Assembly: GCF_030684315.1 (NCBI RefSeq)
Contig: NC_081358.1
Coordinates: forward strand, 3,038,001-3,102,000
Direction: 5' to 3'
Length of the DNA: 64,000 nucleotides
From: Stegostoma tigrinum
Taxonomy: Eukaryota
Position 1 is the first letter of the stretch. Each line of letters starts with the position of its first letter. Under the pieces are notes generated by a model. The model did no database searches, was not told the DNA's origin, and saw nothing but the letters and a program-made list of their open reading frames with translations. This document shows, piece after piece, positions 11,740 to 60,004 of the stretch. A program made the position numbers and the translations under genes.

Positions 11740-11778
11740 CACAGTGACAGAAAGTCAGGGGGAACCCGCGCAAAAAGC
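11740..11778 (+). other. 23-RSS of V at 11.3 kb
   Basis: CACAGTG + 23 nt + GCAAAAAGC. Confidence 0.92.
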
Positions 11779-15130: not shown

Positions 15131-15924
15131 CTCAAATCCATAGAACATTATCTGTGTCTCTGGATTAACAGTCCAGTGAAAATACCACTAGGTCATTGTC
15201 TTCCCAGTTTATTGCCCATCCCTAATTGCCCAGAAGACAGATAAGAGTCAAACATATTGTTGTGGGACTTTTGCTTTTATGGCTTCCCCTATATCTATTC
15301 TGCTCATTCACTCCTTAAAGAACTCTATTATTTTTCAGGCATGACTTCCTCTTCATGATATGCTGCTGCTTTTGCATGGTCATATTACCTATATCCAAAG
15401 GTTCTGCTATTACTTTCATTAAACCAGATTCTGGCATTTTCCCAATAGCAGGCATTAAGGTAACTCTCCCACAGGGTCCAGGGATCCTTTCATTCTTTAG
15501 ACCTATGAATTTCCCTCACACCTTTTCTTCAGTGATAGGTGTTGTAATTATTTCCTCTCCATTTGCACCTCAAATATTTGGTAAATTTGGAATGCTTTTG
15601 AGCCTTCTACTGTGAAGACCAATCAAATGTATTCATTTAACACCCCGGCCATTTCCTGGTTCACGATTATTAGTAACCCAGACTCATTCTATCAGGCCCT
15701 ATGTTCACTCTTGATTCTGTCTTCCTTTTAATATCTACTAAAAAGAGTTCTTGTCATCCTACTTGATGTTACTGGCAAGTGTTTCCTGAAAGTTTATCTT
15801 CTCCCTCTTTAGAATCTTTGGGTCACGTTCTGTTCATTTCTAAAATGTTCCGAGTCCTCTGCCTTATAACTAGTCTTTGCCATATTGTACTATATTTCTT
15901 TCAATCTAACATAATATTTAATTT

Positions 15925-18397: not shown

Positions 18398-20215
18398 ATA
18401 ATATTTAATTTCCCTTCTTAACCACAGTTGCTGTATCTTTTTCTTCAAATCTTTTCCCTCACTGGGATATACCTTTGCTGAAAGACATGAAGTATTTTCT
18501 TAAATATTTGCCATTGTTTCTCAACTGTCTTTGTTGGTGAACTCCTTTTCCCAGTCCACTGCAGCCAGCTGTGCCCTCATATATTGCTAACTAGACTCAT
18601 TAACCCTCATCTGACTTCCAACGCCCATCAGAGTGTTTTTTGCATCGACTGAAATTTTATTAGGATTCATTTATACCACATGTAATGCACCCTTGTATCA
18701 AGGGCCATCGCTGTCATTTCCCCTCCAGTATTCAGATTTATTGTTTTATTTTGGGCTTAGGCTTTAATGACGTCAGGAGCTAAGTGGTTCTCTTGGAAGA
18801 ATATCTAAGGGTCAGTGATCTAACAATTTCTCAGCATGTATGACTTGATTGTATTGTGGATCAACTTTTCCATCATTTTACTTATGATCAACAGCAGAAT
18901 TATTGAAGTTGATAATTGACGTAATTGGATTTGCCCTGCTTTTTGGGCAAATGACTTACCTGGGCAATTTCCCACACTTTTGAGGAGATGCTAGTGTTAT
19001 AACTGCACTGGAGAAGCTTGACAAAGGTTGCAGCAAGTTCTGGAGTAAATATTTTCAGCACTATTCACAGAATACAGCGACAATAGACTTTGCAATATCA
19101 GTGCCTTCAGTCATTTCTTGATACTACACGGTGTGAATTAAATGGGGTGAAGCAAAACAGATTCTTATAAATGCCTGAGCCATGTCTTTTGCAGTGACAT
19201 AATTGTCTCTTCTATCATTGAAGATGGAAATATTTGTGGAATCTCCTCCTCCAGAGAATTGTTTAATAGTCCACCACCACTCACGACTGGTCATGTCGGG
19301 ACTGCACAGCTTATCTCTGATCTGTTGGTTATGGAACCAATTAAGTTTATTGATCATTCACTGCATATGCTGTTTGTTAGGAAATAAATCCTGTGTTGTC
19401 GCTTCACTAGGTTGATACCTCATTTTTAGACCTTCATCGTGTTTTTATTTTGGCAAAACCTCCTGCACACTTCCCATAGATTTTCCCCTAATCTGATGGT
19501 AATGGTGTAGTGGTGAATATATTGAAGTATGAAGTTATAGATTATGTTTGAGTACAATTCTGCTGCTGCTAACTTGTTGAGCTTCATTTGCCCTCTTTTA
19601 CTTGTTATATCACAATTTGACAAGTATTGATATTGACCGGGGAGTGTCAATTGACCACTAACAGCACAGCTTTCTTTGAGTGGTGTTGGGGGTCAGATTT
19701 ACAGAATGACATTTCCCTTTGTACGAAGAAGTGATTCCTGACATCATCAAACTAAAGGGCTCTGGCAACAGTTTTCCAAAATGTCTTAGAGATGGGAGAA
19801 GTGCCAGCCAAATACCTCTATTCCATTTGAGTTCAAAAATGGGGAGAAGGATAAATATGTAGTCATAGGTCTGTCAGTCTAACAGCAGTGGTTAACTTTT
19901 TAAAGCCATTAACCCGATAACAAATTAATTTAACTCTTAAAATCTATAGGCAAATAATAAATGTCACATCATATTTGGTAAAGAGAAATTGTGTCACACA
20001 AATGTTTAGATACAGCTCAGAAACTAAATTGTGAAGATGGCATAAGCAGGTCAAAAAGGGATTTAGAGTAAGTGAAGAATGTGGCAAAATCTAGGAAGTG
20101 GAATCTAATGTGGCAAAGTATAAAACTGTGCATTTTGGCAGGTGTTAAAACAGATTTATGTAGATATTTTCATTGGACATGCTGCATGCTTAGAAATCTA
20201 ACTTTAAAAATGTGG

Positions 20216-21222
20216 ATAATAAAATGTGAGGCTGGATGAACACAGCAGGCCAAGCAGCATCTCAGGAGCACAAAAGCTGACGTTTCGGGCCTAGACCCTT
20301 CATCAGAGAGGGGGATGGGGGGAGGGAACTGGAATAAATAGGGAGAGAGGGGGAGGCGGACCGAAGATGGAGAGTAAAGAAGATAGGTGGAGAGAGTGTA
20401 GGTGGGGAGGTAGGGAGGGGATAGGTCAGTCCAGGGAAGACGGACAGGTCAAGGAGGTGGGATGAGGTTAGTAGGTAGCTGGGGGTGCGGCTTGGGGTGG
20501 GAGGAAGGGATGGGTGAGAGGAAGAACCGGTTAGGGAGGCAGAGACAGGTTGGACTGGTTTTGGGATGCAGTGGGTGGGGGGGAAGAGCTGGGCTGGTTG
20601 TGTGGTGCAGTTGGGGGAGGGGATGAACTGGGCTGGTTTAGGGATGCAGTAGGGGAAGGGGAGATTTTGAAACTGGTGAAGTCCACATTGATACCATATG
20701 GTATCAATGTGGACTTCACCAGTTTCAAAATCTCCCCTTCCCCCACTGCATCCCTAAACCAGCCCAGTTCATCCCCTCCCCCAACTGCACCACACAACCA
20801 GCCCAGCTCTTCCCCCCCACCCACTGCATCCCAAAACCAGTCCAACCTGTCTCTGCCTCCCTAACCGGTTCTTCCTCTCACCCATCCCTTCCTCCCACCC
20901 CAAGCCGCACCCCCAGCTACCTACTAACCTCATCCCACCTCCTTGACCTGTCCGTCTTCCCTGGACTGACCTATCCCCTCCCTACCTCCCCACCTACACT
21001 CTCTCCACCTATCTTCTTTACTCTCCATCTTCGGTCCGCCTCCCCCTCTCTCCCTATTTATTCCAGTCCCCTCCCCCCATCCCCCTCTCTGATGAAGGGT
21101 CTAGGCCCGAAACGTCAGCTTTTGTGCTCCTGAGATGCTGCTTGGCCTGCTGTGTTCATCCAGCCTCACATTTTATTATCTTGGAATCTCCAGCATCTGC
21201 AGTTCCCATTATCTCTGATACT
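20216..21222. mobile_element. ~1 kb near-perfect zero-spacer palindrome made of two inverted PLE family 1 3' ends
   Basis: Centre ataccat|atggtat at 20697/20698; 15 bp TSD actttaaaaatgtgg at 20201-20215 and 21223-21237. Confidence 0.95.
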
Positions 21223-24200
21223 ACTTTAAAAATGTGGGTTTGTTTGTGTTAGCAATTAACTTTTGAAAATTAAATAGCCAGAATTCTAAGTGAGAGGAGG
21301 TGACCAAGAGTTGCTACAGAACGTCAGATAAGAACATTTGAAACTCTGATGTTTGTATTTAGCCTGTGTGAGGAAGTCATTCATGACAGAGAATGTATCA
21401 TGGTCTGAAGTGTGCAGAAGTCACTTGATGGAGTAAAATATGCCAAGCAGCACTCCTATGAAAAGGAGTTTGAAGTTATATTATCTTCGAATAAGAAGTT
21501 ATTATTAATCCTAGACCAACATATTGATATACAATCAGTAGAAAACTTGCGAAGTTAAGTTTTTGAAGTCTTTACACAGAAATGACTTGAAGCTTCACTG
21601 CAGATAGTAAAGCAATGAAAGAAGCTAAATCATGAATGAAATAACTAAGAAAGAGGTATGTCCAGTTCCAAAGTAACTTTTAAAAATGAAGAGAGTCCAT
21701 CTGAATTAGAAATGAGCTGGACTTAGTCTTGGTATGAGTAAAGCACCTGGATGTGTTTTAGAATTGCATGCAATATCTGTGAGTTATTCCAAAAAGATGC
21801 ACCTTGTGATACAAAGCTGATTCTATTCAATCTATAAAAAATTCTTTGGTTATTACTACTGTGTGTTCAAAAATCTTTGATAATGCGGTACAGAAGAACA
21901 GATTGTTTTTGTAATTATTTTTCTCTATTTCTGTTGTTAAACTTTCTGTTGTTTTAGTTTTGAAACAGACAAATATCTGAAATGGATGATACCCTTTGAA
22001 AGAAAGTTACTTCGTGTTGGTTGGAGTTTAGAAGAATAAGTGGCACCTGTTTGAAATATACAAGATGCTAAAGAATCTTGATAGGATGGACGTAGAAAAG
22101 ATGTTGGCTGTGATGATACTGTGGCTTTAAGAAGAGTGTTTTATGTTGGTTTCTGTTAGAGAGACATTAGGGGACAGGTAGTGAGCAGTCTATGAGAGGA
22201 GAAGCAACTTGTGAAACCCTGTGATAATAGGAACTGCAGATGCTGGAGAATCTGAGATAACAAGGTATGGAGCTGGATGAGCACAGCAGGCCAAGCAGCA
22301 TCTTAGGAGCACGAAAGCTGACGTTTTAGGCCTAGACCCTTCATCAGAAAGTTATCTGGTGAACCCCTGAAACTTTATTCAAAAGTTAGAACAATAGAAG
22401 CAACCTGAATGTGTCTGGTTGAGCTCTGACAGAACCAGGGCTTCTAGTTCTTTCGGTGGTAGAAACCGTTGGGGTTGAGAAATGCTGCCACCTTATTGTT
22501 ACGAGTGAAAGCTGGAGCTGTCTCTCTCTCTCAGAATTGTCTTTTGACACTTTTTTCCTCCTAGGTTGGAGAAATGCATATGAGAAAATCTGTTCTCTGA
22601 ATTTGCCTTTTGCCAAGGGAATGTTTATGGGATGTTACGATATTAAAACGCTTACTGGTTAGTAGTAAAACAATCTATTGTTATGTTAAGTTTTCCAATA
22701 GAGTTAAGTAATTCCAATTTCATTCTTCCTTTTTTTGTATTTTAACATAATGTGTTAACAAATTGCATTTTGCTTAACACTGAATAGTTTAACCAGTCGT
22801 ATTGCCCATGGGATACAGGACCTCACATTTACATTTGAAATAAGAAAAAGTTAGATCTAGGCTATCTTCTTAATATATTCCAATGGGTGTGGTCTGGTCT
22901 ATAACATCCCAGTTGTAGGAAAACCTAGAACTAGGGATGAATGTTTAAACATAAGGGGCCACTAACACAGGATAGAAGTAAGGAGACGTTTCTTTCCTTC
23001 ACATGTGATAACTGATCTTTGAAACACTCTTCCTTACATGGTGGTGGAAACAAAGTCCCTGAACATTTTGAATGCCAAGGTTGATAGATTTTTCATAAGC
23101 AAGGGGGTGAAACATTGTTGGTGGTAGACTAGAGTGTGGAGTAATCAAATCAGCCGCAATATTAATGAAAGGCGCAGTAGGCTTTGTCATCGGGTAGCCA
23201 GCTTTGTATGTAATTAAGCAGTGTCTTTGAAATATTGGAATAACTTGACATGGCAAATAGTGTTCATATTCTCTCTACAGATTTCCAAAAGGCATTTGCT
23301 AAGGAATCAAAATGGACTTGTTGTCCAAATTGAAAACCATGAAATTAAATTCACAACGGCTGCATGGTAAATAAATTGTCTACATGTAAGAAAGCAGAAA
23401 ATAGTGATGCATGTATGTTCTTTTCCCCAGTTCACTGAATTATAGAGTGGCTATGGTATAACAAGAAGCCATTGAACCTGTGTTTGCTGCCAATCTGGAA
23501 AAAAAAAACTTATTTAGTGCATTGAACCTCACATTTTTCCTAATTCTTTGCAGTTATTCATCTTGAGAAAATTATTCAATCATGAGAAATAAAAGCAACA
23601 ATACTCAGTGGATCTAGTACTACCTGTGGATAGAGAAACAGAATTATTGTTTTTAGTTAAATATAACATTTCTTCAGACTTCATGTTTAATGCACTGAGG
23701 AAAGGGAATTGAGGGAACAGAGGAAAAGCAAAAGGAAGGTCTGGGCTTGGGTGAAAGTCAAGAGAGGCTAATGCCAAAGATGCCACAGAACAAACAGCAA
23801 AAGGATTGGTCATGGTTGTCAAAATGAAACAAAACATTCAGCTACAGTTAGTATGGATAATAGAACAATGAACAGCTAGCTCCAAAAACAACACAAGGAA
23901 AACTTTTATCAGACTGACATGTGGAATTAAATCAAAACTAAAACTGGGAACAGAGTTCTGAAATTTTTCAAGTCAATATTGAGTCCAGAAGGCTGTAAAG
24001 TTCTTATTTGTAAAACAAAGTGCTAATTTTTGAGCTTGTATTGAATTTCAATTAAACACACAACAGGTCGAACTCAGAATTTTGAGCAAGGTGCAGCATT
24101 AAAATGGCAAGCAACCAGAAGCGTGTATTTTCAAATTATGGGACCGGAGAATGTGTGCAGAATGATGAGGATGAAATCAGGGACAGGGACATTTCAGTTC

Positions 24201-25649: not shown

Positions 25650-26290
25650 CATAAGAAGATAAGAAATAGGAGCAGGAAGAGGCTATATGGTCCATTGAGT
25701 CTGCTCTTCCGTTCAATAAGGTCATGGCTGATATTTTTGTGGACTCAGCTCCACCAGCTGAGGCACACCCTGAGGCACTCCACCAGCCAATGATTGCCAA
25801 TCAAACCAACATCCAGTTATCTCCTCTCTTTGCTTTCTGTTACTTATCCAATTTTCTATGTATGCTAATACATTACCTGTAATGCTGTGTACCTTTATCT
25901 TATACAGCAGCCTGTTGTGTGGCACCTTGTTGAATGCCTTCTGGAAATCCAGAAACAATACACCCGCTGGTTCCCAGTTGCCCACCACATTCGTAATGCC
26001 CTCGTAGAATTCCAGAAATTTATTTTAAAATGACCTGTCTTCCATAAACCCAAGCAGCCTCTGCCCTATGGGACAATTTCTATCAGGATGTGTGGCAATT
26101 TCTTCCTTGATTATAGATTGAAGCAATTTCCTCACTACAGAAGATAGTTTAATAGGCCTATAGTTGCCCGTCTTTTGTTTACCTCCTTTTTATAACAGCG
26201 ACATCACATTTGCTGTTTTCCAATCTCCTGGAATTGCCCCAGAGTCTGCCAACTTTTGGTAAATTACCACAAGCGCATTAGCAAGGAGAC
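25650..26290 (-). mobile_element. Old CR1 fragment
   Basis: LDFQKAFNKVPHNRLL on the minus strand. Confidence 0.75.
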
Positions 26291-26379
26291 TCGTCTACCT
26301 TTTGCCCCAAAAGCTTGCCCAACACTAGCTTGTTAGTGATAATGGTCTTTTCCAGGTCCTCACCTGCCATAGCCTGAAC

Positions 26380-28475
26380 TCCCCATCTACATCCATGACA
26401 CCACCCACGCCCTCCACTTCCTCCAGAACTTCCAATTTCCCAGTCCCCAACACCTCATTTTTAACATGGACGTCCAGTCCCTATATACCTGCATTCCCCA
26501 TGCAGATGGCCTAAAGGCCGTCCGCTTCTTCCTGTCCCACAGGCCCAACCAGTACCCCTCCACAGACACCCTCATCTGCCTAGCCAAACTCGTCCTCACC
26601 CTCAACAACTTCTCTTTTGATTCCTCCCCATTCCTACAGACAAAAGGGGTTGGCCATGGGTACCCGCATGGGCCCAAGCTATGTCTGTCACTTTGTAGGT
26701 TACGTGGAACAATCCCTCCTCCATATCTACACTAGCCCTAAACACCACCTCTTCCTCCGTTACATTCATGGCTGTATTGGCGACACCTCGTGCTCCCATG
26801 AGGAGCTCAAACAGCTCATCCACTTCACCAACACCTTCCACCCCAACCTCAAGTTCACCTGGACCATCTCCAACACATCCCTCACATTCCTGGACCTCTC
26901 TGTCTCCATCTCAGGCAACCACCTAGAAACCGATAGCCATTTCAAGCCCACTGACTCTCACAGCTTCCTAGAATACACCTCCTCCCACCCACCTTGCTGG
27001 AAAAATTCCATTCCTATTCCAAATTCCTTCGCCTCTGCCGCATCTGCTCCCAGGGTGAGTTATTCTCCTCCCGTACATCTCAGATGTCCTCGTTCTACCA
27101 GGACTGCAACTTCACCCCTGCAGTGGTTGAGAACACCCTCGCCTGTGTCTCTCGCATTTCCCGCAACTCATCCCTCACACTCTGTTCCCACAATAACCAC
27201 CAAAAGGGAATATCCCTCATTCTCACATAGCACACCACCAAACATCGGATCCAACGCATCATCCCCCGACACTTCCGCCATCTACAATCCAACCCAACCT
27301 CTCTGTAGGGCTCACGGTTTTTGTTAGATGCTGGGGTGATGTTCTCCCTGGGCAGGAGGGTGGAGTTATACCACGGAGTTCTGAGCTGAGTAAACAGATA
27401 GAACTCAACCGTGTCTCCCACATTTCCCACAACACATCCCTCACACCCTGTCCCTGCAATAACCACCAAAAGAGAATCCCCATCATCCTCACATACCACC
27501 CCACCAACCTCCAGATACAACGCATCATCCTCTACCACTTCCGCCATTTGCAATCCAACACCACCACTAAAGATAGTTTTCCATCCCCACCGTTGTCTGC
27601 TGTCTGGAGGGACCACTCTCCCTGTGACTCCCTTGTCTCCTCCACACTCCCCTCCAACCCCACCACACCCTGCACTTTCCTGTGCAACCGCAGGAAGTGC
27701 GACATCTGCCCCCATACTTCCTCCCTCACCCCCATCTCAAGCCCCAAGAAGACTTGCCACATCAAGCAGATGTTCACCTGTACATCTGCCAATGTGGAAT
27801 ACTGCATCCGCTGTACCCGGTGTGGCCTCCTCTACATTGGGGAAACCAAGCGGAGGCTTGCAATAAACAACTGCACCTCCCAGTCACAAACCATTTCAGC
27901 TCCCCCTCCCATTCCTTAGATGACATGTCCATCATGGGCCTCCTGCAGTGCCACAATGATGCCACCCGAAGGTTGCGGAACAGCAACTCACATTCCGCTT
28001 GGAAACCCAGCAGCCCAATGGTAATTGTGAATTTCACAAGCTTCAGAATCTCCCCTCCTCCTACCGCATCCCAAAACCAGCCCAGCTTGTCCCAGCCTCC
28101 CTAACCTGTTCTTCCTCTCACCCATCCCCTCTTCCCACCTCAAGCCCCACCCCCATTACCTACCTCATCTACCCTATTACTAACCTAATCCCGCCCCCTT
28201 GACCTGTCCGTCCTCCCTGGACTGACCAATCCCCTCCCTACCTTCCTAACTACACTCACCTCTACTGGCTCCATGACCGCCTCTTGGACTTGTCTGTCTC
28301 CTCTCAACCTATCTTCTCCTCTATCTTCGATTTGCCTCTTTCACTCTCCTTATTTATTTCAGCACCATCTCTCCCTCCCCCAGTTCTGAAGAAGGGTCTT
28401 TGCTCGAAACTTCAGCTTTCCTGCTGCTCTGATACTGCTTAGCCTGCTGTGTTCATCCAGCTCTTGTTATCTCCT
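26380..28475 (+). mobile_element. Degenerate PLE family 1 copy with internal duplication and foreign insert
   Basis: MDVQSLYTCIPH, GLAMGTRMGP, LYIGETKRRL with frameshifts; degraded hammerhead ~28386. Confidence 0.85.
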
Positions 28476-29234
28476 CCCCGATCGAACTGTATTTTGTTTA
28501 AGCATAAGACTTGGGTTTTACCTACTTACTTTCCATCTGTATCTTAAAATCATACAAACTGTGATTGCTACTTCCCAGACTGTCCGTAACTATGAAATCT
28601 TCAATTATGTCTGTGTCAATGTGCAGGACCAGATCAAGACAGCTTTTTCCCTCGTTAATCCTCTTCCATACTGTTCGAGGAAACTAGGGCAGATACATTC
28701 TCGGAACTCCTCCTCAATCTGGTTTGAATGACTTGGTTTGACCAATCAATATCCGGATTAAGATCTCCCATGATAATTGCAGCACTATTTTTACAGACAA
28801 ATCCTTTGTTTATTGCCCACCCCACCGACATGGAATTAGTTGGTGGCTGATGAACTGCGCCTATCAGTGAATGATCATTTGTACCCCGAATGTAGATTTT
28901 GTTGGGATGTTTGCCGTAGATTTCCTACTGGGAACAGCAGGATCATGAACAACAACTTTAGTTAAGATGATTAGGAGTTCAGAACATATATTTCTTTGCC
29001 AATATTTCAGGAATCCACCCTTCGAGAGAATGGAGCGAATTCACTGTCAAATTTGATAATTTTTGTTACAGTTGCGTCTGCTTCACTCCTCGCCCCGCCC
29101 ACTCCACTCACTGAGTCTACCCGCGCTCACCTCCCAGTCTAGTGCAAGTGAGCAGATTAACTCGGAGCAACTTCTTTAAAATTTACAACCCGAAACGGGA
29201 TTTTAAATTAACACTTCCCGTGTCTGTGAAAGCA

Positions 29235-29410
29235 AAATAAACCAATGACAAACACGGAGAATAAGCGGTCTCACATTTTATGAAGGAGCATTAAAGTGGG
29301 CGGGTTCAATTTATGCTGAGAGCGGAAATTCCCGCCGTTGAGGGGCGGGGTTGGTGTGGGGTTGGGGGTGTGGGAGAGGCAGAGGAGATCTCGCCTCCTT
29401 TATAGACATG
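29235..29410 (+). promoter_or_regulatory. Putative promoter of type C V (identical copy at ~59180-59355)
   Basis: CCAAT, two GC boxes (GGGCGGG) and TTTATAG ~55 nt upstream of the ATG. Confidence 0.55.
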
Positions 29411-29457
29411 ACCCTGAGCAGCAGTAACCCAGTACCGAGCGAGCCGGTCACTGCACC

Positions 29458-29878
29458 ATGTTCCGGGTAATTGTGGCGCTACTTTTGTCCTGTGCGTATT
29501 TAAGTGTCTTTACTGAAGTTTACTTAGTTGCCAGTCCTTCATTCATCATCGTTTAAAACGTAACTTTGTTAATTTTATTTTCCCAGATGTGCGTTTGGCT
29601 GAGTCTATAACACAGTCACCGATATCGTATGTAACCAAGCTCGGTAAAAGTGCCAGGTTTAAATGTACCGTAGACAGCGGCAGCACCACGGTCCATTGGT
29701 ACCAGCGCCGGGAAGGTCAGGCGCCCTCCAGAATACTTTATTATGACAGCAGCGTCGTACGGGATCCGGAATTCGGCAGCAGGTTTAAAGCGGATAAGAG
29801 GAACACTTTGTGCACTTTGATCATCAATAACATCGAGAAGGAAGACGCTGCCACATATTACTGCGCCTATTGGGACAG
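29458..29878 (+). CDS. TRGV: TCR gamma V segment, type C copy 1, apparently functional (leader 29458-29491, intron 29492-29586, V exon 29587-29878)
   Basis: Kozak-like caccATG, leader MFRVIVALLLS, GTGCGT donor, tcccAG acceptor; ESITQSP...FKC...VHWYQ...DAATYYCAYWD. Confidence 0.92.
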
Positions 29879-29917
29879 CACAGTGTTCAACAGAGACTGA
29901 AAGCCTTTACAAATACA
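29879..29917 (+). other. 23-RSS of V at 29.5 kb
   Basis: CACAGTG + 23 nt + ACAAATACA. Confidence 0.92.
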
Positions 29918-30255
29918 CGGCGCTTCAGCTCGGTCTACACTCAGCTCCCACACCAACAACACCAGCTTGCATTTATAAAGCGCCTTTAACGTAGGAAATC
30001 GTCCCGCCTAGTCTCGGGAGATGCATTGTAAAACAAAATTTAACATGAGGCTAAGTGTCTGTTGGCGGATGTGTATTTGAGATGTGCCCTTTGTTTTGAA
30101 TTCGGAGGCGCCTTCCTGGGTGTGACATGAGTTAGCATGGAAATGCAAATTGAGTTCTGGCTTCGGAGAGACAGAGAAAGAAGATTCCATTTTCATATAT
30201 TCTTAGTTAGGATAAAAGAACATTGAGTTAATTGAACAAACACGCTCAAATGCAG

Positions 30256-31601
30256 AGATAATGGGAACTGCATTAGAACTTCATTAGAAAGACGGAGATT
30301 GACGGGTATGGACAGGGTGGATAGCAAAAAGCTTTTTCCCAGAGTGGGGGACTCAATTACTAGGGGTCATGAGTTCAAAGTGAGGGAAGGAAAGTTTAAG
30401 GGAGATATGCGTGGAAAGTTCTTTACACAGAGGGTGGTGGGCGCCTGGAACGCGTTGCCAGCGGAGTTGGTAGACGCAGACACGTTAGCGTCTTTTAAGG
30501 TATATTTGGACAGGTACACGGATGGGCAGGAAGCAAATGGACACAGACCGTTAGAAAATAGATGACAGGTTAGACAGAGGATCTTGATGGGCGCAGGCTT
30601 GGAGGGCCGAAGGGCCTGTTCCTGTGCTGTAGGTTTCTTTGTTTCTTTGCAGCGTAACAAACTGTGGAGCTGGATGAACACAGCAGGCCCAGCAGCATCT
30701 TAGGAGCACAAAAGCTAACGTTTCAGGCCTAGACCCTTCTTCAGAAAAGCGGGATGGGGAGAGCGTTCTGAAATAAATAGGGAGAGAGGGGGAGTTAAAC
30801 CGAAAATGGATGGAGGAGAAGATCGGTGGAGAGGAGAGTATAGGTGGGGAGGTAGGGAGGGGATAGATCAGTCCGGGGAGAACGGACAGGTCAAGGGGGC
30901 GGGATGAGGCTAGTAGGTAGGAAATGTAGGTGTGGCTTGAGGTGGGAGAAGGGGATAGGTGAGAGGAAGAACAGGTTGGGGAGGCGTGGACGAGCTGGGC
31001 TGGTTTTGGATGCAGTGGGAGGAAGGGCGATTCTGAAGCTGGTGAAATCCACATTGATACAATTGGGCTGCAGGGTTCCCAAGCGGAATATGAGTTGCTG
31101 TTCGTGCAACCCCTCCTGCAGGGCCACAATGATGCCACCCGAAAGTTACAGGAACAGCAACTCATATTCCACTTGGGAACCCTGCAGCCCAATGGTATCA
31201 ATGTGGATTTCACCAGCTTCAGAATCGCCCTTTCTCCCACTGCATACCAAAACCAGCCCAGCTCGTCCACGCCTCCCTAACCTGTTCTTCCTCTCACCTA
31301 TCCCCTTCTCACACCTCAAGCCGCACCTCCATTTCCTACCTACTAACCTCATCCCGCCCCCTTGACCTGTCCGTCCTCCCCGGACTGACCTATCCCCTCC
31401 CTACCTCCCCACCTATATCTCCTCTCCACCTATCTTCTCCTCTATCCATCTTCGGTCCGCCTCCCCCTCTCTCCCCATTTATTTCAGAATCGTCTCCCCA
31501 TCCCCCTTTTCTGATGAAGGGTCTCGGCCCGAAACGTCAGCTTTTGTGCTTCTAAGATGCTGCTTCGCCTGCTGTGTTCATCCAGCTGCACACTTTCTTA
31601 C
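30256..31601. mobile_element. PLE fold-back palindrome with a nested CR1 3' fragment (~30275-30652)
   Basis: Inverted arms meeting at ~31112; 15 bp TSD cacgctcaaatgcag at 30241-30255 and 31602-31616. Confidence 0.85.
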
Positions 31602-32339
31602 CACGCTCAAATGCAGCACCGTTTCAGTGAAAATGCAAAGTGGCCGAACCAGCATTAATCCTGAAGCCTGAGTTGGAAATGAAATGTGACAATGACCCGG
31701 TACCACACTAGGAAAGTCAAAGCAATCGGGATCAGTCAAGGACATGAATGTAGCACGGGCTTCACAGAGGAAATGGGATGGCACCTGGAAGATCGGGAGT
31801 AGGGACCATGGTTGGCCACTTTTGGAATGTGCAACAAATAATGTTGCTGTGGAAAACAGGCTATTCCTGATTGGGAGTAATGTACTATCCACGTGATAAG
31901 CAATGTATAAACATCCTCAACGAGTTGGATTATTAACTCGGAATGTTTTGCTGGAGCAGTCTTACCCAATATTGGCTCAATAAAGGACCGTTGACTTGTA
32001 TCGGGCGGCTCCTGATATTATTTATGCAAAAGCCTCCCACAGCAGTATAAAAAAAACAGATACACATTCTGGCAAAATCCCATTCATTCACAAATTAAAG
32101 TGTTGTTATGAAGAAAGAGTTAATAATCTTGGCTTGCGTTCTCTTCAATTTAGATAATAAAGAACTAATCTAATTGAGCTACTTGAAATGAGAAAGGACC
32201 AGAAGAGGATAGATAAGAATCAATAAATTTCTCCAGTGGGAAGAGTCCGGAAAGAACAGGAAGGGTTACCAGGACCCGAAACGTTAACTCTGTTTTTTGC
32301 CTTCACAAATGCTGCCAGACTTGCTGAAATTTTCCAGCG

Positions 32340-34220
32340 TTACAAGGTGTAGAGCTGGATAAACACAGCAGGCCAAGCAGCATCACAGGAGCAGGAAAGC
32401 CGACGTTTCGGGCTTACACCCTTCTTCAGAAATGGAGGAGGGGAGGGGGGAATCTGAAATAAATAGGGAGAGGGGTGGCGGATAGAAGATGGATGGAGGA
32501 GAAGATTGGTGGAGAGGAGACAGACCGGTCAAAGAGGCGGGGGTGGAGCCAGTAAAAGTGAGTGTAGGTGGGTGGTCGGGAGGTGATAGGTCAGTCCAGG
32601 GAAGACGGACAGGTCAAGCGGGCGGGATGAAGTTAGTAGGTAGGAGATGGGGCTGAGGCTTGAGGTGGGAGGAGGGAATAGGTGGGAGGAAGGACAGGTT
32701 AGGGAGGCAGGGACGAGGTGGGTTGGTTTTGGGATGCGGTAGTGGGAGGGGAGATTTTGAAGCTTGTTAAGTCCACATTGACACCGAGATAACAAGGCGT
32801 CGAGCTGGATGAACACAGCAGGCCAAGGAACATCATAGGAGCAGGAAGTCTAACGTTTCGGGCCTCGACGCTTCCTCGGAAATGGTGCCTTGGGCTGCAG
32901 GGTTCCCAAGCGGAATATGAGTTGCTGTTCCTGCAACCTTCGGATAGCATCATTGTGGCACTGCAGGAGGCCCAGGCTGGACATGTCGTCTGAGGAATGG
33001 GAGGGGGAGTTGAAATGGTTCGCGACTGGGAGGGGCAGTTGTTTATTGCGAGCCAAGTGCAGGTGTTCTGCAAATTCCGCTTGGTTTCCCCGATGTAGAG
33101 GAGGCCACAACGGGAACAGTGGATGCAGTATACCACATTGGCAGATGTGCAGGTGAACCTCTGCTTGATGTGGAAAGTCTTCCTGCGGCCTGGGATGGGA
33201 GTGAGGGGAGAGGTGTGGGGCAGCTGTAGCACTTCCCGGTGTGGTGCCGGGTGTGGTGGGTTAGGGTTAGGAGGGGAGTGTGGAGAGTACAAGGACATCA
33301 CGGAGAGTGCGGTCCCTCCGGAAGGCAGATATGGGTGGGGAGGGAAAAATGTCTTCGGTGGTGGGGTCGGATTGTTTATGATTCTGCCGTTTTCACCTTC
33401 TCTGGATGCAAATTTTGTTTCTGGGAGACTGCACATGCTGGGAGCTAGAGTAGATAACTGTGGATGCGGAAAAGCACAGCAGATCGGACAGCATCCGAGT
33501 AGCAGTTGAGACAGAAGATGGATGGGTTGGGGGTGGAGAGATTTTGAAACTGGTGATGCAGGTGGGAGTTATTGTGGTTTGTCAGTGGGAACGGTGAATG
33601 GATAGGAGGGTGGGAAATTGCACAGGTTGGGCGAGGAGATATTTTAAAGCTGGTGAAGTCTACATTCATGCCATTTGGCTGTAGGCTCCTAAGTCAAAAT
33701 ACCAGGTGTTGTTCCACCTGTTTGCATTTGGCCTCACTCTGACGGTGGGGGAGGCCAAGAATGGATAGATCACCGGGTTTTGGGCGGGAGAGTTAAAGTG
33801 GACGGCAACTGGAAGGTCAGATTGGATAGTACGTGCAGAGCGAAACCTATTGGGATCCTGCACTTGGTCTCTCCGATATAGTGGAGACCACACCGGGAAC
33901 AAAGGATACAGTCGATGAGGTTAGATGAAGTGAAGATGAATCTCTGCTGAATCTGCAAGGATTATTTGGGGCCTCCAACAGATGTGAGAGGGGAGGTTTG
34001 GGGCAGGTGTATCACCTCCTGTGGTTGCGAGGAAAGGCACTGGATGTGGTCCGGGTTCGGTGCGGAGTGTGGAGCTAACAAGGGAGGCGGGGTGTAAAAG
34101 GTTCTTGGGGAAAGCAGACAGGGGTGGAGAGAGAACATTTTGGTGGTGAGTTCAGATTGTCGATGGCACAAATGTCAGCGGAGGATGCGTTGTGTTGGAA
34201 AGCTGGTGGGATGGTATGTG
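32340..34220 (-). mobile_element. Cluster of nested or degenerate PLE fragments
   Basis: VYCIHCSRCGLLYIGETK and DCILCSRCGLHYIGETK on the minus strand. Confidence 0.8.
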
Positions 34221-34494
34221 CTTTTGTTACTCTTCACTTCCCATCACCACCACTGTTCCCTTTGCATCTCCATCCCTTGCGATAATTAACTCTCCTGTCC
34301 TCCACCTGTGACAGATTCCCCTTTTAATGAAACCTCCCCATTCCCTGCATCCCTCCTATTTACGGGATTGGCACTGTCAGCATCACAACTTATTCAAGCT
34401 TAGGGTTCTGAAACGTTAACTCTGATTTTCTCTCTACAGTTACTGCTTCAGTATTTCCAACATTTTCTGTTTATATTGCAAAGAACAAACTTGG

Positions 34495-34600
34495 AGGGCA
34501 GGAGGCGGGCTTGAAACCCTGATCAATATCTCACTGATTGGTTTGAAGGAAGTGAATCGTTTCCTTTTAGTCTCTAACCAGCAGCTGGAGAGAACAGTTG
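34495..34600 (+). promoter_or_regulatory. Putative promoter of type A V (homologues at ~1810-1915 and ~62985-63085)
   Basis: GC-box-like GGCGGG, inverted CCAAT (ATTGG), ETS-like GGAAGT and E-box CAGCTG; ATTGG and CAGCTG are kept in all three A copies; no Ig octamer. Confidence 0.5.
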
Positions 34601-34614
34601 AAGATTGAGCGAAC

Positions 34615-35056
34615 ATGTCGCTGTACTGCTGGCTCATTGCGGTAACCGCTTTGCCCTGTATGTGTTTCTGACGCTATTATTCAGATCCCGCTGTTCGTTC
34701 ACATCCATCACATCGTTCCTTTGTAACCCTGTATATTCTTTCCTCAGGCGGATATTTTGCACAAACACTGAAACAGATTGTCCCATCCATTACCAAAAAT
34801 GTGGGTAAAACCGCTAGATTCAAATGCGAAGTCGAAGGTGCAACTATCAGTGATAGTTATCCCCTTCACTGGTACCAGCAAAAGCCGGGCCAGGCACCCA
34901 CCCGAATCCTCTATTATGGAGCAGGCACAACGCAGGATCCGGGATTTGGTGAACGGTTCAAAGCCGGGAAATCTAACAACAAAGTATTCTACCTCACAAT
35001 CGACAAACTAGAGCCAGAGGACACCGCCACCTATTACTGTGCGTACTGGATAGATA
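34615..35056 (+). CDS. TRGV: TCR gamma V segment, type A copy 2, apparently functional (leader 34615-34657, intron 34658-34747, V exon 34748-35056)
   Basis: Leader MSLYCWLIAVTALP; QTLKQ...RFKC...LHWYQ...DTATYYCAYWID; canonical splice sites. Confidence 0.93.
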
Positions 35057-35095
35057 CACAGTGCAACACATCAATACAAAGTTTGTACAAAAATA
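35057..35095 (+). other. 23-RSS of V at 34.6 kb
   Basis: CACAGTG + 23 nt + ACAAAAATA. Confidence 0.93.
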
Positions 35096-35283
35096 CTGAA
35101 CGATTTGAAGCGAAACATTTCGAGGAATTCACAGACTCCTCCCCTATTTGGGTAAAGTAGCGACGTCACCACAGCTGGATCTGTGTCCGAGCTTCCTCCG
35201 TCTGAATTCGTGACATGGAGAGTGATGTGAAGCCGGCCAGGTCTGGGCTGTTTTGATCCACGTGCTTTTGTTTTCTTTTCCAA

Positions 35284-38030: not shown

Positions 38031-39299
38031 CTATTTTTAATCCTGCAGTTAGTGCACCAAGGGCTGGCTCACTGTAGCGTTTGTGGTTTTTGCACGGTAG
38101 GACCCGCACTGCCGATGTTGTGGTGATATTTTCCCTGGGCAAGAGAGTGGAGTTATACTGTAAGGTTCTTCCTTCAGTCTATCGAATTTCAGGGCGTGGA
38201 CATACGTACGAGCAGGTGGAGCAGTGTAAATCAGCCAAAAATCAATGGTGAATTTGTTATGGGCGAAGGGGTGGGGAGGAGGTGGATCGGGGAATCTTGA
38301 ATGTGTTAGGCAGCTGTGGTCCCATTGCAACAGTAAAGGGGCTTCAACACGTAACTTCTCATCAGCCAACATCTCAGTGTAACAAAATAATGTTTCTGTT
38401 TTATTTGGAGTATGTTGTGATCTGGGATGTTCTGCTTGACAGAATGGTGGAGACAGATCCAGTAGTTAATTTCGAAAACAAACTGGACAAAAATTTGAAA
38501 TTATACAAGGCATTGGAGAGAACACGGCTGGAATATGGTGTTCTTGCTGTAGAGGGAGTATAAAGTTCAAACAGTACTAGAGAGGTGCACGAAACATGTT
38601 CCTGATGGTGGGGGAGTCTAGAACAAGTAGTCACATTTTAAAATTAAGATCAGATACGGATCTTTTAGGACAGAGATGTGGAGAAACTTCTCCAGCCAGA
38701 ATGCCGAATTGATACCTGCAGAATGTGTTTGAGGCCACAAACATTGAATGTTTACAAGAAGGAAGTAGATGTAGCTCTCGTTGCGAAAAGGAACAAGGCA
38801 TGTGGAGTTGTTGGGGGGAGGGTAGATAGGGAGGACGGGATTAAAGTATTAAGATCCATGATCAGCCAATATCATATTACATGGCGGGGTGGAATGGCCT
38901 ACTCTTACTCCTTTCTTCAGGGATACAGGAACAAGACAATACAACTGATTAGACAACACTTTCAGAGAAACAGAACCGCTAAAACGGTAGGCTGATCAGT
39001 GTCGCCGTTACTGGAAAATTCCACGATACCGTCATGTGTAGCTCAGGCCAACAGTTCCTCGAATCCAATTTACCGCGTTCAGCGCATTTGTAGCACCCTC
39101 TGCACATTGAAATATCAAAAACCCTTGATAATTGGCTCTCTGGATGGGAAAGCTGAGTGGTTAAATTAGCTGCTATTGCTGATATGATCTGCTCGCCCCT
39201 ACCAATCGATGAAGTCATATTCACTGCGTTTTCAGATGACACCCAGAAACACGATTTTCCTGTCGGGATTGTACAAAGACACAGCATCCTGTTGACATT

Positions 39300-40120: not shown

Positions 40121-40411
40121 GTGAACATTTTGCCGAGGTCTTGCATCAGTTTCCAATATCGGTCACTAGGCCCAAGGCTACAACGATCAAAATGCAATAT
40201 GTGGCACAAAACACAGAAACCATCCATTGGTACCAGAGCCGACCCAGCAGGCGCCGAGGAGATTAATCTATTTCAGCAAAAACAGAGCTGTATTGGACTC
40301 GGGAATCCCCTCCAAGTTCTCAGCTGAGAAAAGTGTCTCTTCATTCTTCCTTGTAATTGATAACATTGAACAGTCCAATGATGCCATCTATTACTGTGCC
40401 TATTGGATCCT
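40121..40411 (+). pseudogene. TRGV: TCR gamma V pseudogene, type D (V exon only)
   Basis: tttgcAG acceptor; EVLHQFPISVT...KMQY (Cys23>Tyr)...IHWY, then a 1-nt frameshift near 40233, resuming as EPTQQAPRRLIY...DAIYYCAYWI; no leader exon found, SINE sequence lies immediately upstream. Confidence 0.88.
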
Positions 40412-40451
40412 CACAGTGAGAAACAACCATAAGAAGCTCATTACAAAAACC
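40412..40451 (+). other. RSS of pseudogene V, consensus heptamer and nonamer, 24-nt spacer
   Basis: CACAGTG (40412-40418) + 24 nt + ACAAAAACC (40443-40451). Confidence 0.9.
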
Positions 40452-44750: not shown

Positions 44751-44770
44751 ACTGACGTCATTTCCGGTAT
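44751..44770 (+). promoter_or_regulatory. CRE (TGACGTCA) plus ETS-like TTCCGG ~70 nt upstream of the type B pseudogene ATG
   Basis: TGACGTCA at 44753-44760; CRE-like elements are typical of TCR V promoters; the paralogue has TGACATCT at 11223. Confidence 0.55.
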
Positions 44771-44829
44771 TGATTTGGCCCCTTGAAGGCTTTCAGCAAA
44801 TCCGAACCAGCTCTGTGTTGACTATCAAC

Positions 44830-45759: not shown

Positions 45760-46539
45760 CACCATGACTGTCAGTCGGGGAAAAACTGGACAGAATGCAG
45801 TCGCCGTCCTGCGGACTGTTTACAAACTGTGAAGACACAAATGGCAGGTGTCGCGTTTGGAGAGTTTCGCCAGCTTTGAACTCCACTCTAGGCCGCACAG
45901 ACAGTTCGTTGTTTTCACAATGCTCTTTGTCTTGTTAAACTTGGGAGAATAAGTTATGACGATCTAACTGTTCTATAAAATGGACGTAACCATCCATTTA
46001 CTATTTAAACAAATATCTCTGTTCATTTACCATGTTTGTGAAAACCCAACAATGCGGTTTAAAGCCTCCTGCTGTCAAACGATCGTCAATGAATATGTCA
46101 CCGAAACTAACATACCACATCCAATATATAGTCACATCCAAAATAATTAGAAAAGGTTCTTAGAGTCTGTTCCCACTGACAGCGAATTCGTGGCGGGTCT
46201 GTGATCTAATTCCATTTACCAACCGTGGATCCGCATCCGCAAACCGCACGGAATGCTGTGGGGATACTGCTACAAGTTTAGCAATTTAGATCCCTGGACT
46301 GAGGCCTTGGATACAAATTCACATACGACTACGGTGGTTGAGGGGTTAGATTCTTAAAAGTTAAACTCAGTAATGCAATGAAACTACTGGATTGTACTGA
46401 ACACCAGTGGAGTTTACAAGTAACCAGTGGTCAATGAAATTTGCCATCCTAGGGCGAAACCTATCACAAGGCAGTATGTTTGTTTCCGGCTCAGCATGAG
46501 CCAACCAAAAAGTTTAGTTTCACCTTGAAGAGGGCAGCA

Positions 46540-58410: not shown

Positions 58411-59401
58411 AGTGATTTCACCTCGCTAGACGATCCTTTCTGAAGAAGGATCCAGGCACAAATCGTCGACTCTCCTGGGCCTCTGATGCTGCCTGGCCTG
58501 TGTTCCTCCAACTCCACATTGTGTTATCCCTACCAATGAGTTCCTTTACTATTCCTGTTTCAACATACAGGACCAGATCAAGACAGCTTTTTCCCTCGTT
58601 AATCCTCTTCCATACTGTTCGAGGAAACTAGGGCAGATACATTCTCGGAACTCCTCCTCAATCTGGTTTGAATGACTTGGTTTGACCAATCAATATCCGG
58701 ATTAAGATCTCCCATGATAATTGCAGCACTATTTTTACAGACAAATCCTTTGTTTATTGCCCACCCCACCGACATGGAATTAGTTGGTGGCTGATGAACT
58801 GCGCCTATCAGTGAATGATCATTTGTACCCCGAATGTAGATTTTGTTGGGATGTTTGCCGTAGATTTCCTACTGGGAACAGCAGGATCATGAACAACAAC
58901 TTTAGTTAAGATGATTAGGAGTTCAGAACATATATTTCTTTGCCAATATTTCGGGAATCCACCCTTCGAGAGAATGGAGCGAATTCACTGTCAAATTTGA
59001 TAATTTTTGTTACAGTTGCGTCTGCTTCACTCCTCGCCCCGCCCACTCCACTCACTGAGTCTACCCGCGCTCACCTCCCAGTCTAGTGCAAGTGAGCAGA
59101 TTAACTCGGAGCAACTTCTTTAAAATTTACAACCCGAAACGGGATTTTAAATTAACACTTCCCGTGTCTGTGAAAGCAAAATAAACCAATGACAAACACG
59201 GAGAATAAGCGGTCTCACATTTTATGAAGGAGCATTAAAGTGGGCGGGTTCAATTTATGCTGAGAGCGGAAATTCCCGCCGTTGAGGGGCGGGGTTGGTG
59301 TGGGGTTGGGGGTGTGGGAGAGGCAGAGGAGATCTCGCCTCCTTTATAGACATGACCCTGAGCAGCAGTAACCCAGTACCGAGCGAGCCGGTCACTGCAC
59401 C

Positions 59402-59822
59402 ATGTTCCGGGTAATTGTGGCGCTACTTTTGTCCTGTGCGTATTTAAGTGTCTTTACTGAAGTTTACTTAGTTGCCAGTCCTTCATTCATCATCGTTTAA
59501 AACGTAACTTTGTTAATTTTATTTTCCCAGATGTGCGTTTGGCTGAGTCTATAACACAGTCACCGATATCGTATGTAACCAAGCTCGGTAAAAGTGCCAG
59601 GTTTAAATGTACCGTAGACAGCGGCAGCACCACGGTCCATTGGTACCAGCGCCGGGAAGGTCAGGCGCCCTCCAGAATACTTTATTATGGCAGCAGCGTC
59701 GTACGGGATCCGGAATTCGGCAGCAGGTTTAAAGCGGATAAGAGGAACACTTTGTGCACTTTGATCATCAATAACATCGAGAAGGAAGACGCTGCCACAT
59801 ATTACTGCGCCTATTGGGACAG
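59402..59822 (+). CDS. TRGV: TCR gamma V segment, type C copy 2, apparently functional (leader 59402-59435, V exon 59531-59822)
   Basis: Identical to the 29.5 kb gene except one CDR2 base (GAC>GGC, D>G, 59690). Confidence 0.92.
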
Positions 59823-59861
59823 CACAGTGTTCAACAGAGACTGAAAGCCTTTACAAATACA
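59823..59861 (+). other. 23-RSS of V at 59.4 kb
   Basis: CACAGTG + 23 nt + ACAAATACA. Confidence 0.92.
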
Positions 59862-60004
59862 CGGCGCTTCAGCTCGGTCTACACTCAGCTCCCACACCAA
59901 CAACACCAGCTTGCATTTATAAAGCGCCTTTAACGTAGGAAATCGTCCTACTTAGTCTTGGAAGATACAGCATTAAACAAATTTTAATATGAAGCTTTTA
60001 ATAC

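What the first reader, a model, noticed from the sequence alone, without database searches (positions are those of the whole stretch)
28624..30004. ~1.38 kb near-identical tract around two V genes inside an old duplication: candidate gene conversion, with the only coding change in CDR2
Seen: 28624-30004 equals 58568-59948 (offset 29944) with only two differences found by eye, 29009 A/58953 G upstream and 29746 A/59690 G (CDR2 D>G). Just outside both ends the sequences remain alignable but are clearly diverged (tatgtctgtgtcaatgtg vs tattcctgtttcaacata; cgcctagtctcgggagatgc vs tacttagtcttggaagatac). 31610-32250 vs 61845-62410 is also heavily diverged. Inference: a recent duplication would not leave homologous but diverged flanks. 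The sharp edges fit germline gene conversion that homogenised promoter, leader, V exon and RSS as one unit.
Basis: partly seen in the sequence, partly recalled or inferred. Interest (0 to 1): 0.8.

Follow-up and report, generated by a model that had tools for sequence, protein, structure and literature searches.

The report
Gene conversion between duplicated shark V genes
Two copies of a T-cell-receptor-type variable gene lying 30 kb apart in a shark genome are almost letter-for-letter identical over 1.38 kb while everything around them is only about 70% alike, the classic footprint of one copy having recently overwritten the other (gene conversion), a well-known process in immune gene families.

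Summary
28624-30004 equals 58568-59948 over 1381 bp, with two differences: 29009 A/G, and 29746 A/G (Asp/Gly in CDR2). At the same fixed offset, the next 41 bp on the left are 63% identical and the next 48 bp on the right are 73% identical. Both values are far above chance. Beyond those flanks, different repeat insertions break the alignment.

The two copies sit in an old tandem duplication of about 30 kb. Its unique blocks are collinear at 67-75% identity. An unconverted V pair in the same units is only 77-81% identical.

The tract holds a complete, apparently functional V gene: 834 bp upstream, split leader, V exon, 23-bp-spacer RSS, and 87 bp downstream. The array is V-only and TCR-gamma-like.

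Germline interlocus gene conversion is the best explanation (about 0.8). A second, older tract of about 640 bp at 97% identity surrounds the neighbouring V pair. There, a three-copy comparison shows tract and flank disagree.

Short-read contigs from other runs fit two copies but do not span the tract. No long-read or orthologue test could be run.

This is a new example of a known process. Interest is modest.

The parts
28624..30004 (+). Near-identical tract, copy 1 (V-A1 with 834 bp upstream of the ATG and 87 bp beyond the RSS nonamer)
   Evidence: 1381 bp, 2 mismatches to 58568-59948; an independent k-mer contig (X1) starts exactly at 28624.
58568..59948 (+). Near-identical tract, copy 2 (V-A2)
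28583..28623 (+). Left flank of copy 1, homologous but diverged; pairs with 58527-58567
   Evidence: 26/41 identical at the fixed offset, p about 1e-6; alignment.
30005..30052 (+). Right flank of copy 1, homologous but diverged; pairs with 59949-59996
   Evidence: 35/48 identical, p about 5e-11; alignment.
29009..29009 (+). Non-coding difference A (copy 1) / G (58953, copy 2), 449 bp upstream of the ATG
29746..29746 (+). Coding difference A/G (59690): Asp vs Gly at the second residue of CDR2 (YYDSS / YYGSS). Asp is shared with the Chiloscyllium punctatum relative P0001, and A is the letter in the related species' contig.
   Evidence: (X6 shows no other letter at 29746).
29458..29503 (+). Leader exon (L-part1, 46 nt, ATG at 29458; donor A|GTGTCT); copy 2 at 59402-59447
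   Evidence: Read. Phase-1 junction restores the V frame found by tblastn. No transcript evidence.
29504..29586 (+). Leader intron (83 nt, GT..AG); copy 2 at 59448-59530
   Evidence: Read.
29587..29878 (+). V exon (11 nt of leader, then V region ...RFKC...HWYQ...YYCAYWD); copy 2 at 59531-59822
   Evidence: tblastn; Pfam V-set, E 3.7e-14; 81% to P0001, C. punctatum.
29879..29917 (+). Recombination signal sequence: heptamer CACAGTG, 23-nt spacer, nonamer ACAAATACA; copy 2 at 59823-59861
34524..35165 (+). Second, older homogenised tract around V-B2; pairs with V-B3 at 63009-63646. About 97% identical, against about 72-75% in the left flank 34207-34430.

Best explanation
The window is a V-only array of TCR-gamma-like variable gene segments. 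All seven are on the + strand, each is followed by a 23-bp-spacer RSS, and each ends in CAYW or CAFW. The array contains an old tandem duplication with a period of about 30 kb. Between the two paralogous V-A genes, 29.9 kb apart in direct orientation, a recent germline non-allelic homologous recombination event without crossover (interlocus gene conversion) copied up to 1381 bp from one paralogue into the other. The copied DNA runs from 834 bp upstream of the start codon, through leader, intron, V exon and RSS, to 87 bp beyond the nonamer. Gene order and each copy's own flanks were left intact.

What is shown: the identity step, the homology of the flanks, the collinearity of the units, and the intactness of both genes.

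What is inferred: the mechanism (strand invasion at a break in one copy, synthesis from the other, non-crossover resolution), that the event was germline, and its direction. The two remaining differences are most simply mutations after the event. Asp at 29746 is shared with two related sharks, so Gly in copy 2 looks derived. They could also be patchy mismatch repair.

The tract divergence is 0.145%. The flanks diverge by about 30%, and a non-coding piece of a related species' orthologue by about 9%. This places the event long after the duplication and after that species split.

The effect is two almost identical, apparently functional V genes that differ by one CDR2 residue.
For:: 1381 bp with 2 mismatches; in-register flanks at 63% and 73% identity, significant at a fixed offset, then loss of alignment where different repeats are inserted; collinear blocks between unit I and unit II. 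These are 5287-5711/38572-38973 at 68%, 10328-12516/44142-46508 at 70-75%, 12713-13212/50593-51070 at 73%, 25829-26108/51480-51759 at 74%, 26173-26375/56136-56339 at 69%, and 31602-32196/61838-62411 at 68%; the V-C/V-C' pair of the same units is only 77-81% identical, which serves as an internal unconverted control; the V-B2/V-B3 pair has its own tract (642 bp, 18 substitutions plus one 4-bp indel) next to a 72-75% flank. With the third copy B1, the flank is star-like (odd-one-out counts 33/24/18) whereas the core has B1 odd at 79 sites against 11 and 6. That is tract-versus-flank incongruence in the same array; both V-A genes have an open frame, GT-AG leader intron and intact 23-RSS; in run X1 a contig begins exactly at 28624, as expected for a fork in the k-mer graph there. 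In the same run, tract contigs have depth 35 and 45.8 against 22.6 for the right-flank contig. The G alleles appear in X2 and X5. X5's contig carrying G29746 continues past 30004 with letters unlike copy 1's flank. The related organism B has orthologous contigs 3-9% different, including two distinct ones over 29797-29910.
Against: No read or contig spans the tract together with both unique flanks. One search returned only k-mer contigs, which carry no phase. The junction of copy 1's left flank with the tract is not directly covered by a listed contig. One X2 contig joins copy 2's left flank, both G alleles and copy 1's right flank. This is either an arbitrary path through the repeat or a different haplotype. 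The adjacent homologous flanks are short (41 and 48 bp). The larger left-hand collinear blocks (26785-28463 / 56973-58403) belong to a multi-copy repeat family, so they cannot prove paralogy on their own. No orthologous locus was available for a tract-versus-flank tree of V-A. The best read holders may be the very sample that was assembled.
Confidence: 0.8

Rival explanations
1. Assembly or polishing artefact. The two V-A genes are really more different, or there is only one, and consensus polishing or a mis-join wrote the same 1.38 kb at both places.
For: One search gives no spanning read. The X2 contig joins copy 2's left flank to copy 1's right flank. The left flank of copy 1 (28558-28623) has little contig depth.
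Against: Two differences are retained, and both alleles appear in read-derived contigs. The X1 contig starts exactly at 28624, and tract depth is about twice that of the right flank. X5, from another study, carries G29746 followed by a flank unlike copy 1's. Polishing cannot homogenise paralogues that differ by the 20-30% seen elsewhere in the units, because reads would not cross-map. The window has no N or gap. The B pair shows an analogous tract with 3% divergence that cannot be a polishing effect.
Confidence: 0.08
2. Two successive unequal crossovers (or a double crossover) between misaligned units, rather than a single conversion event, produced the patch.
For: The units are direct repeats 30 kb apart, so unequal crossing-over is possible. 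The X2 contig L2-tract-R1 is the junction expected in a triplicated crossover product.
Against: It requires two exchanges only 1.4 kb apart that restore the two-unit structure, which is less parsimonious. The outcome cannot be told apart from conversion by sequence. The X2 contig has no phase value.
Confidence: 0.06
3. A recent small DNA copy (segmental or repeat-mediated transduction, or retro-copy of an unspliced transcript) inserted a new V gene by a non-homologous route, and the flank similarity is only repeat-family similarity.
For: Parts of the tract and its right edge are multi-copy in the genome by k-mer depth (bins 28746-28839 and 29874-30061 are raised). A very young repeat family is active nearby, with 99.8% identical copies at 15965-16614 / 17748-18397.
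Against: Flank homology continues in register, without gaps, on both sides of the tract. The tract edges are internal to the shared sequence, not at repeat termini. No target-site duplication or poly-A is seen at the edges. The copy sits at the position expected from the collinear 30 kb units. The intron and 834 bp of upstream DNA are retained.
Confidence: 0.04
4. Extreme purifying selection has kept 1.38 kb unchanged since the old duplication.
For: The tract contains a functional-looking gene with promoter and RSS.
Against: Identity is equal in the intron, at synonymous sites, in repeat-derived upstream DNA and beyond the RSS. The functional-looking B genes differ by 3% and the C pair by about 20%. 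The orthologue in a related species differs by 3-9%.
Confidence: 0.01

Closest known systems
Interlocus (non-allelic) gene conversion in tandemly duplicated antigen-receptor genes, e.g. TRG loci of Bovidae and homogenised TRGC genes of mammals (PMC2270265, PMC7349638)
   Same: Paralogues inside duplicated TRG units. Local homogenisation contradicts the surrounding divergence. It is inferred from similarity peaks and shared repeats, as here.
   Different: Those cases concern J-proximal regions, C exons and whole V-J-C cassettes in mammals, and are mostly inferred at lower resolution. Here the tract is a single V gene unit with base-pair-defined edges, in a V-only stretch (no J or C segment in the window) of a shark's V-gene array. 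The papers found report no such tract for a shark TRGV (the library is incomplete and the sandbar shark TRG paper was not held).
Gene conversion of UrIg2 constant-domain exons in nurse and epaulette sharks (PMC12227049)
   Same: Germline homogenisation of duplicated Ig-superfamily exons within orectolobiform sharks, shown by within-species clustering.
   Different: That case involves C-domain exons within one non-rearranging gene, not separate rearranging V segments 30 kb apart.
Somatic, AID-driven Ig gene conversion in chicken B cells using upstream pseudo-V donors (as summarised in PMC2193156)
   Same: Templated copying between V sequences of one locus.
   Different: That process is somatic, uses short patch tracts within the V exon, has pseudogene donors and depends on AID. 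Here the tract is in the germline assembly, 1.4 kb long, includes promoter and RSS, and both partners look functional.

Membership tests
Interlocus gene conversion tract | A near-identical tract between paralogues embedded in homologous but much more diverged flanks | tested here: met
   2/1381 mismatches inside. In-register flanks match at 26/41 and 35/48 outside.
Interlocus gene conversion tract | The paralogues belong to an older duplication (collinear, diverged units) | tested here: met
   eight or more collinear blocks between about 5-35 kb and about 38-64 kb at 67-75% identity; the V-C/V-C' pair is 77-81% identical.
Interlocus gene conversion tract | Copy number and gene order unchanged (non-crossover outcome) | tested here: met
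   In the assembly, both copies sit at their expected positions in units I and II with their own flanks.
Interlocus gene conversion tract | Phylogenetic incongruence between tract and flanks when an outgroup or orthologues are used | tested here: inconclusive
For the neighbouring V-B trio it is met. Organism B contigs are 3-9% different and include two distinct versions at 29797-29910, which fits but does not prove conversion after the species split.
Interlocus gene conversion tract | Both copies verified by single molecules spanning the tract plus unique flanks | tested here: inconclusive
   laid only k-mer contigs. Fork position, depth ratio and both alleles fit two copies, but there is no spanning record.
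TCR gamma variable gene segment (TRGV) | V-set Ig domain with Cys23, Trp41 and Cys104 | tested here: met
   PF07686, E 3.7e-14. RFKC, HWYQ and YYC are read.
TCR gamma variable gene segment (TRGV) | Split leader, with a 23-bp-spacer RSS immediately 3' of the V exon | tested here: met
   CACAGTG-23-ACAAATACA at 29879. The GT-AG leader intron in phase 1 is read. There is no RNA evidence.
TCR gamma variable gene segment (TRGV) | Closest named relatives are V-gamma rather than Ig light chain or other TCR V | tested here: inconclusive
   only unnamed shark proteins. PDB hits to antibody VL and to gamma chains have similar E-values (about 1e-16). Atlas neighbours of P0001 include 'T cell receptor gamma variable 3' but also a kappa V cluster. 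The CAYW ending is typical of V-gamma from general knowledge.
TCR gamma variable gene segment (TRGV) | Lies upstream of TRGJ/TRGC and is expressed as a rearranged gamma chain | not testable with these tools
   No J-type RSS or C exon was found in the window (scan). No RNA run is on record.

The most novel reading that the evidence does not exclude
Homogenisation in this array is not random. It recurrently targets whole V-gene units (promoter to just past the RSS) in both the A and B pairs, while differences re-accumulate or are spared specifically in CDR1 and CDR2. This would point to a break hotspot or a lymphocyte-type enzyme (RAG or AID) acting at V genes in the shark germ line. Such activity is already suspected from germline-joined shark Ig genes.
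Probability: 0.06. Interest if true: 0.65.

Novelty: new member of a known kind. Interest (0 to 1): 0.3.

Why it matters
This is a clean example, resolved to the base pair, of concerted evolution acting on a single rearranging V gene unit in a cartilaginous fish. It warns annotators that V-gene trees in this locus will not reflect the duplication history. It also means the two V-A genes can be told apart in repertoire data by only one CDR2 residue. With the older tract around the V-B pair, it suggests that conversion is recurrent here and that CDRs re-diversify afterwards. It does not reveal a new mechanism.

Tried and rejected

The homologue P0001 gave mixed V-gamma and V-kappa neighbours.

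3. From memory I took the 5' part of the tract for a LINE endonuclease fragment and the 3' edge for a shark SINE. Pfam gave nothing for the 58-aa minus-strand ORF. Rfam gave nothing in the whole window at gathering threshold. The SINE-like motif occurs only in the two tracts plus one weak match. I therefore claim only 'multi-copy by k-mer depth', with no family name.

4. I ran a three-way comparison of the repeat copies left of the tract to prove that they predate the duplication. Three taxa give a star and cannot decide, so I dropped this as evidence.

5. The sandbar shark TRG locus paper (PMC2689029) is not held.

6. The scan's earlier findings, searched by words and by sequence, gave nothing on this tract.

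7. The CDR2 location of the single coding change cannot be treated as significant. One of two differences falling in about 20 of 1381 bases has p of about 0.03 before allowing for the other 'interesting' targets.

Full report
**Observation**

A direct comparison at offset 29944 shows that 28624-30004 and 58568-59948 (1381 bp) differ at two positions: 29009 A/G and 29746 A/G. Ungapped identity in 100-bp steps is 0.99-1.00 inside the tract and 0.2-0.5 outside it. BLAST of the window against itself extends the ungapped alignment to 28583-30052 vs 58527-59996. That is 1470 bp with 30 mismatches and no gaps, so 28 of the 30 mismatches fall in the 89 flanking bases.

At the fixed offset the flanks behave as follows:

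| Stretch | Matches | p at fixed offset |
|---|---|---|
| Left flank 28583-28623 | 26/41 | about 1e-6 |
| Right flank 30005-30052 | 35/48 | about 5e-11 |
| Next 40 bp leftward | 6/40 | chance level |
| Next 48 bp rightward | 14/48 | chance level |

Two or fewer mismatches in 1381 bp has probability 2e-209 at 30% divergence and 3e-53 at 9%. The window has no N.

**What the tract contains**

The tract holds one complete V gene segment on the + strand:

| Feature | Copy 1 | Note |
|---|---|---|
| Start codon | 29458 | |
| Leader exon | 29458-29503 | 46 nt |
| Leader intron | 29504-29586 | 83 nt, GT-AG, phase 1 |
| V exon | 29587-29878 | 11 nt of leader, then ...RFKC...HWYQ...YYCAYWD |
| RSS | 29879-29917 | CACAGTG, 23-nt spacer, ACAAATACA |

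Copy 2 has the same features 29944 bp further on. The V exon is a V-set domain (Pfam PF07686, E 3.7e-14). The tract therefore spans 834 bp upstream of the ATG to 87 bp beyond the nonamer. Both copies are open and look functional. Splice sites are read from the sequence. No RNA run was available.

The 29746 difference changes Asp to Gly in YY[D/G]SS, immediately after FR2, which places it in CDR2. It is the only coding difference.

**Locus context**

tblastn with the V protein finds seven V segments, all on the + strand. All except B1 have a 22-24-nt-spacer RSS that passed the scan:

| Segment | Coordinates | Comment |
|---|---|---|
| B1 | 2161-2355 | RSS is visible but its nonamer is below the scan's cut-off |
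| C | 11440-11736 | |
| A1 | 29586-29879 | |
| B2 | 34756-35049 | |
| D | 40129-40406 | out of frame |
| A2 | 59530-59823 | |
| B3 | 63241-63534 | |

No J-type RSS was found. The closest database proteins are unnamed V-domain proteins of the sharks Chiloscyllium punctatum (81%) and Scyliorhinus torazame (63%).

I read the array as TCR-gamma-like for three reasons. It is V-only. Its V segments carry 23-bp-spacer RSSs. Its V segments end in CAYW or CAFW, which is typical of V-gamma from general knowledge. Formal similarity does not separate V-gamma from Ig light-chain V, so this label is inferred at roughly 0.75.

**Is there an old duplication?**

Yes. Units of about 30 kb (about 2.4-35 kb and about 35-63.5 kb) share collinear blocks in the same order and orientation:

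| Unit I | Unit II | Identity |
|---|---|---|
| 5287-5711 | 38572-38973 | 68% |
| 10328-12516 | 44142-46508 | 70-75% |
| 12713-13212 | 50593-51070 | 73% |
| 25829-26108 | 51480-51759 | 74% |
| 26173-26375 | 56136-56339 | 69% |
| 28583-30052 | 58527-59996 | the tract and its flanks |
| 31602-32196 | 61838-62411 | 68% |
| 34221-35182 | 62700-63663 | 91% (V-B) |

A copy-number map shows which of these blocks occur only twice in the window. The blocks just left of the tract (26785-28463 / 56973-58403) belong to a family with five or more copies in the window, so they prove nothing by themselves. A three-way comparison of those copies was uninformative. Another first-stage note (s1-882239) calls this family Penelope with hammerheads. 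I did not verify that, and Rfam at gathering threshold found no match in the window.

Between the tract flanks and the next alignable blocks the two copies carry different insertions. This explains why the adjacent homology is only 41 and 48 bp long.

There is a useful internal control. V-C and its partner V-C' in the same two units are only 77-81% identical across leader, intron and V exon. That is roughly what V-A would look like without homogenisation.

**A second tract**

The V-B2/V-B3 pair shows the same kind of step. From about 34207 to 34430 identity is 72-75%, and from 34524 to 35165 it is about 97% (18 substitutions and one 4-bp indel in 642 bp).

The third copy B1 allows a test of tract against flank:

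| Region | Odd-one-out counts |
|---|---|
| Flank 34207-34430 | B2 33, B1 24, B3 18 (about equidistant) |
| Core 34524-35165 | B1 79, B3 11, B2 6 |

This incongruence is the standard signature of conversion, and it shows that homogenisation between these two units has happened more than once.

Ten of the 18 substitutions in the B core lie in CDR1 (six within 34848-34858) and CDR2 (34911-34934). This echoes the CDR2 position of the single coding change in the A pair.

**Read evidence (runs)**

Only Logan k-mer contigs were available. They carry no phase and drop variants.

- **Run X1, fork.** One contig starts exactly at 28624 and runs to 29586 with no difference. That start is what a fork in the k-mer graph at the left tract edge produces.
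- **Run X1, depth.** The tract contigs have depth 35 and 45.8. The contig 29975-30333, which starts 30 letters before the right tract edge and covers copy 1's right flank, has depth 22.6.
- **Run X2 (another sample).** It has a 1779-nt contig whose six differences fit copy 2's left flank (four sites in 28611-28623) plus G at 29009 and 29746. It then continues without difference into copy 1's right flank up to 30333. This is either an arbitrary path after bubble and tip removal or a real recombinant haplotype.
- **Run X5 (another study).** It has a contig with G29746 that stops matching at 30004 and carries eight further letters unlike copy 1.
- **Run X6 (a related species, organism B).** It has contigs 3-9% different over 28987-29910. 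It has A at 29746, and two distinct contigs at 29797-29910 (3 and 9 differences). This suggests its two copies are not homogenised there.

Together these results fit two real copies and a conversion that postdates the species split. They are not a spanning-read proof, and the best holders may be the assembled sample itself. The bisulfite raw-read runs (X21-X23) were not used, because converted reads would not match.

**Mechanism and timing (inferred)**

The simplest account is a germline double-strand break in one V-A copy. The break was repaired by synthesis from the paralogue 30 kb away and resolved without crossover. Two closely spaced unequal crossovers would give the same sequence.

Direction cannot be told. 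Asp at 29746 is shared with P0001 and with organism B's contig, so Gly in copy 2 is probably a later mutation. The catshark relative P0002 and the B family have Gly at that position, so a patch left unconverted is also possible.

The tract divergence is 0.145%. The flanks diverge by about 30%, and organism B's non-coding piece (28987-29211) by about 9%. On that scale the event is very recent.

**Rivals**

- **Assembly or polishing artefact (about 0.08).** Both alleles, the fork position and the depth ratio argue against it, but it is not excluded without long reads.
- **Non-homologous recent copy or repeat-mediated transduction (about 0.04).** It does not fit the gapless, in-register homology on both sides, the expected position in the unit, or the lack of any insertion hallmark.
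- **Selection alone (about 0.01).** It is refuted by equal identity in intron and non-coding DNA, and by the 3-9% divergence of the related species over the same stretch.

**Comparison with what is known**

Gene conversion between duplicated antigen-receptor genes is well established. It is invoked for TRG J-proximal regions, V genes and C exons in Bovidae (PMC2270265) and for TRGC genes across mammals (PMC7349638). Within sharks it has been shown for the UrIg2 C-domain exons of nurse and epaulette sharks (PMC12227049). I found no report of such a tract for a shark TRGV in the held library. That library is incomplete, and the sandbar shark TRG locus paper was not held.

**Verdict**

The finding is real and correctly interpreted. 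It is a new member of a known kind. Its interest lies in the sharp edges, the recurrence in the neighbouring pair, and the CDR-focused differences. Interest 0.3.

- Read laying and the look-up of sequencing runs were limited to one call each.

Noticed in passing
window 34524-35165 and 63009-63646: A second, older homogenised tract lies around the V-B2/V-B3 pair. It is about 97% identical, against 72-75% in the left flank, and with the third copy B1 the flank and the core give different relationships. Ten of the 18 substitutions lie in CDR1 (34848-34858) and CDR2 (34911-34934).
   Followed up: yes
window 44830-45880 (insertion 45104-45581): V-C', the partner of V-C (11440-11736), is a pseudogene. 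A ~475-bp copy of the multi-copy repeat family is inserted in the V exon with an ~11-bp duplicated target (homologue of 11564-11574). It also has frameshifts, a stop codon and a degraded heptamer (CACCATG).
   Followed up: partly
window 2060-2400: V-B1 has Tyr where the first conserved Cys should be (IFKYEVEG against RFKCEVEG in B2 and B3). It is probably non-functional.
   Followed up: no
window 40129-40460: V-D is out of frame with stop codons, yet it keeps a perfect heptamer and a perfect nonamer (ACAAAAACC) with a 24-nt spacer.
   Followed up: no
window 29557-29586 (run X1): In run X1 the contigs break with a 30-nt overlap at the intron/V-exon border, and depth rises from 35 to 45.8. This hints at a third sequence in that genome that shares the V exon and RSS from 29557 on but differs upstream. 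It may be a further V-A copy outside the window; one would be expected about 5 kb upstream of B1.
   Followed up: no
window 28611-30333 (run X2): A 1779-nt contig joins copy 2's left flank, both G alleles and copy 1's right flank. It is either a k-mer graph path artefact or a real unequal-crossover (extra-copy) haplotype in that sample.
   Followed up: no
window 28746-28839 and 29874-30061: Sub-stretches of the tract are multi-copy in the genome by k-mer depth (378 and 90-163, against about 40; 1864 in the related species). The V gene therefore sits between old repeat fragments, and the right tract edge lies in one. No family could be named (Pfam and Rfam negative).
   Followed up: partly
window 15914-21233: There are very young copies (98.5-99.8% identical, some inverted) of the same multi-copy repeat family that flanks the V-A genes. 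Rfam at gathering threshold found no hammerhead or other RNA family anywhere in the window. The 'hammerhead-bearing Penelope' label in another first-stage note is therefore unverified here.
   Followed up: partly
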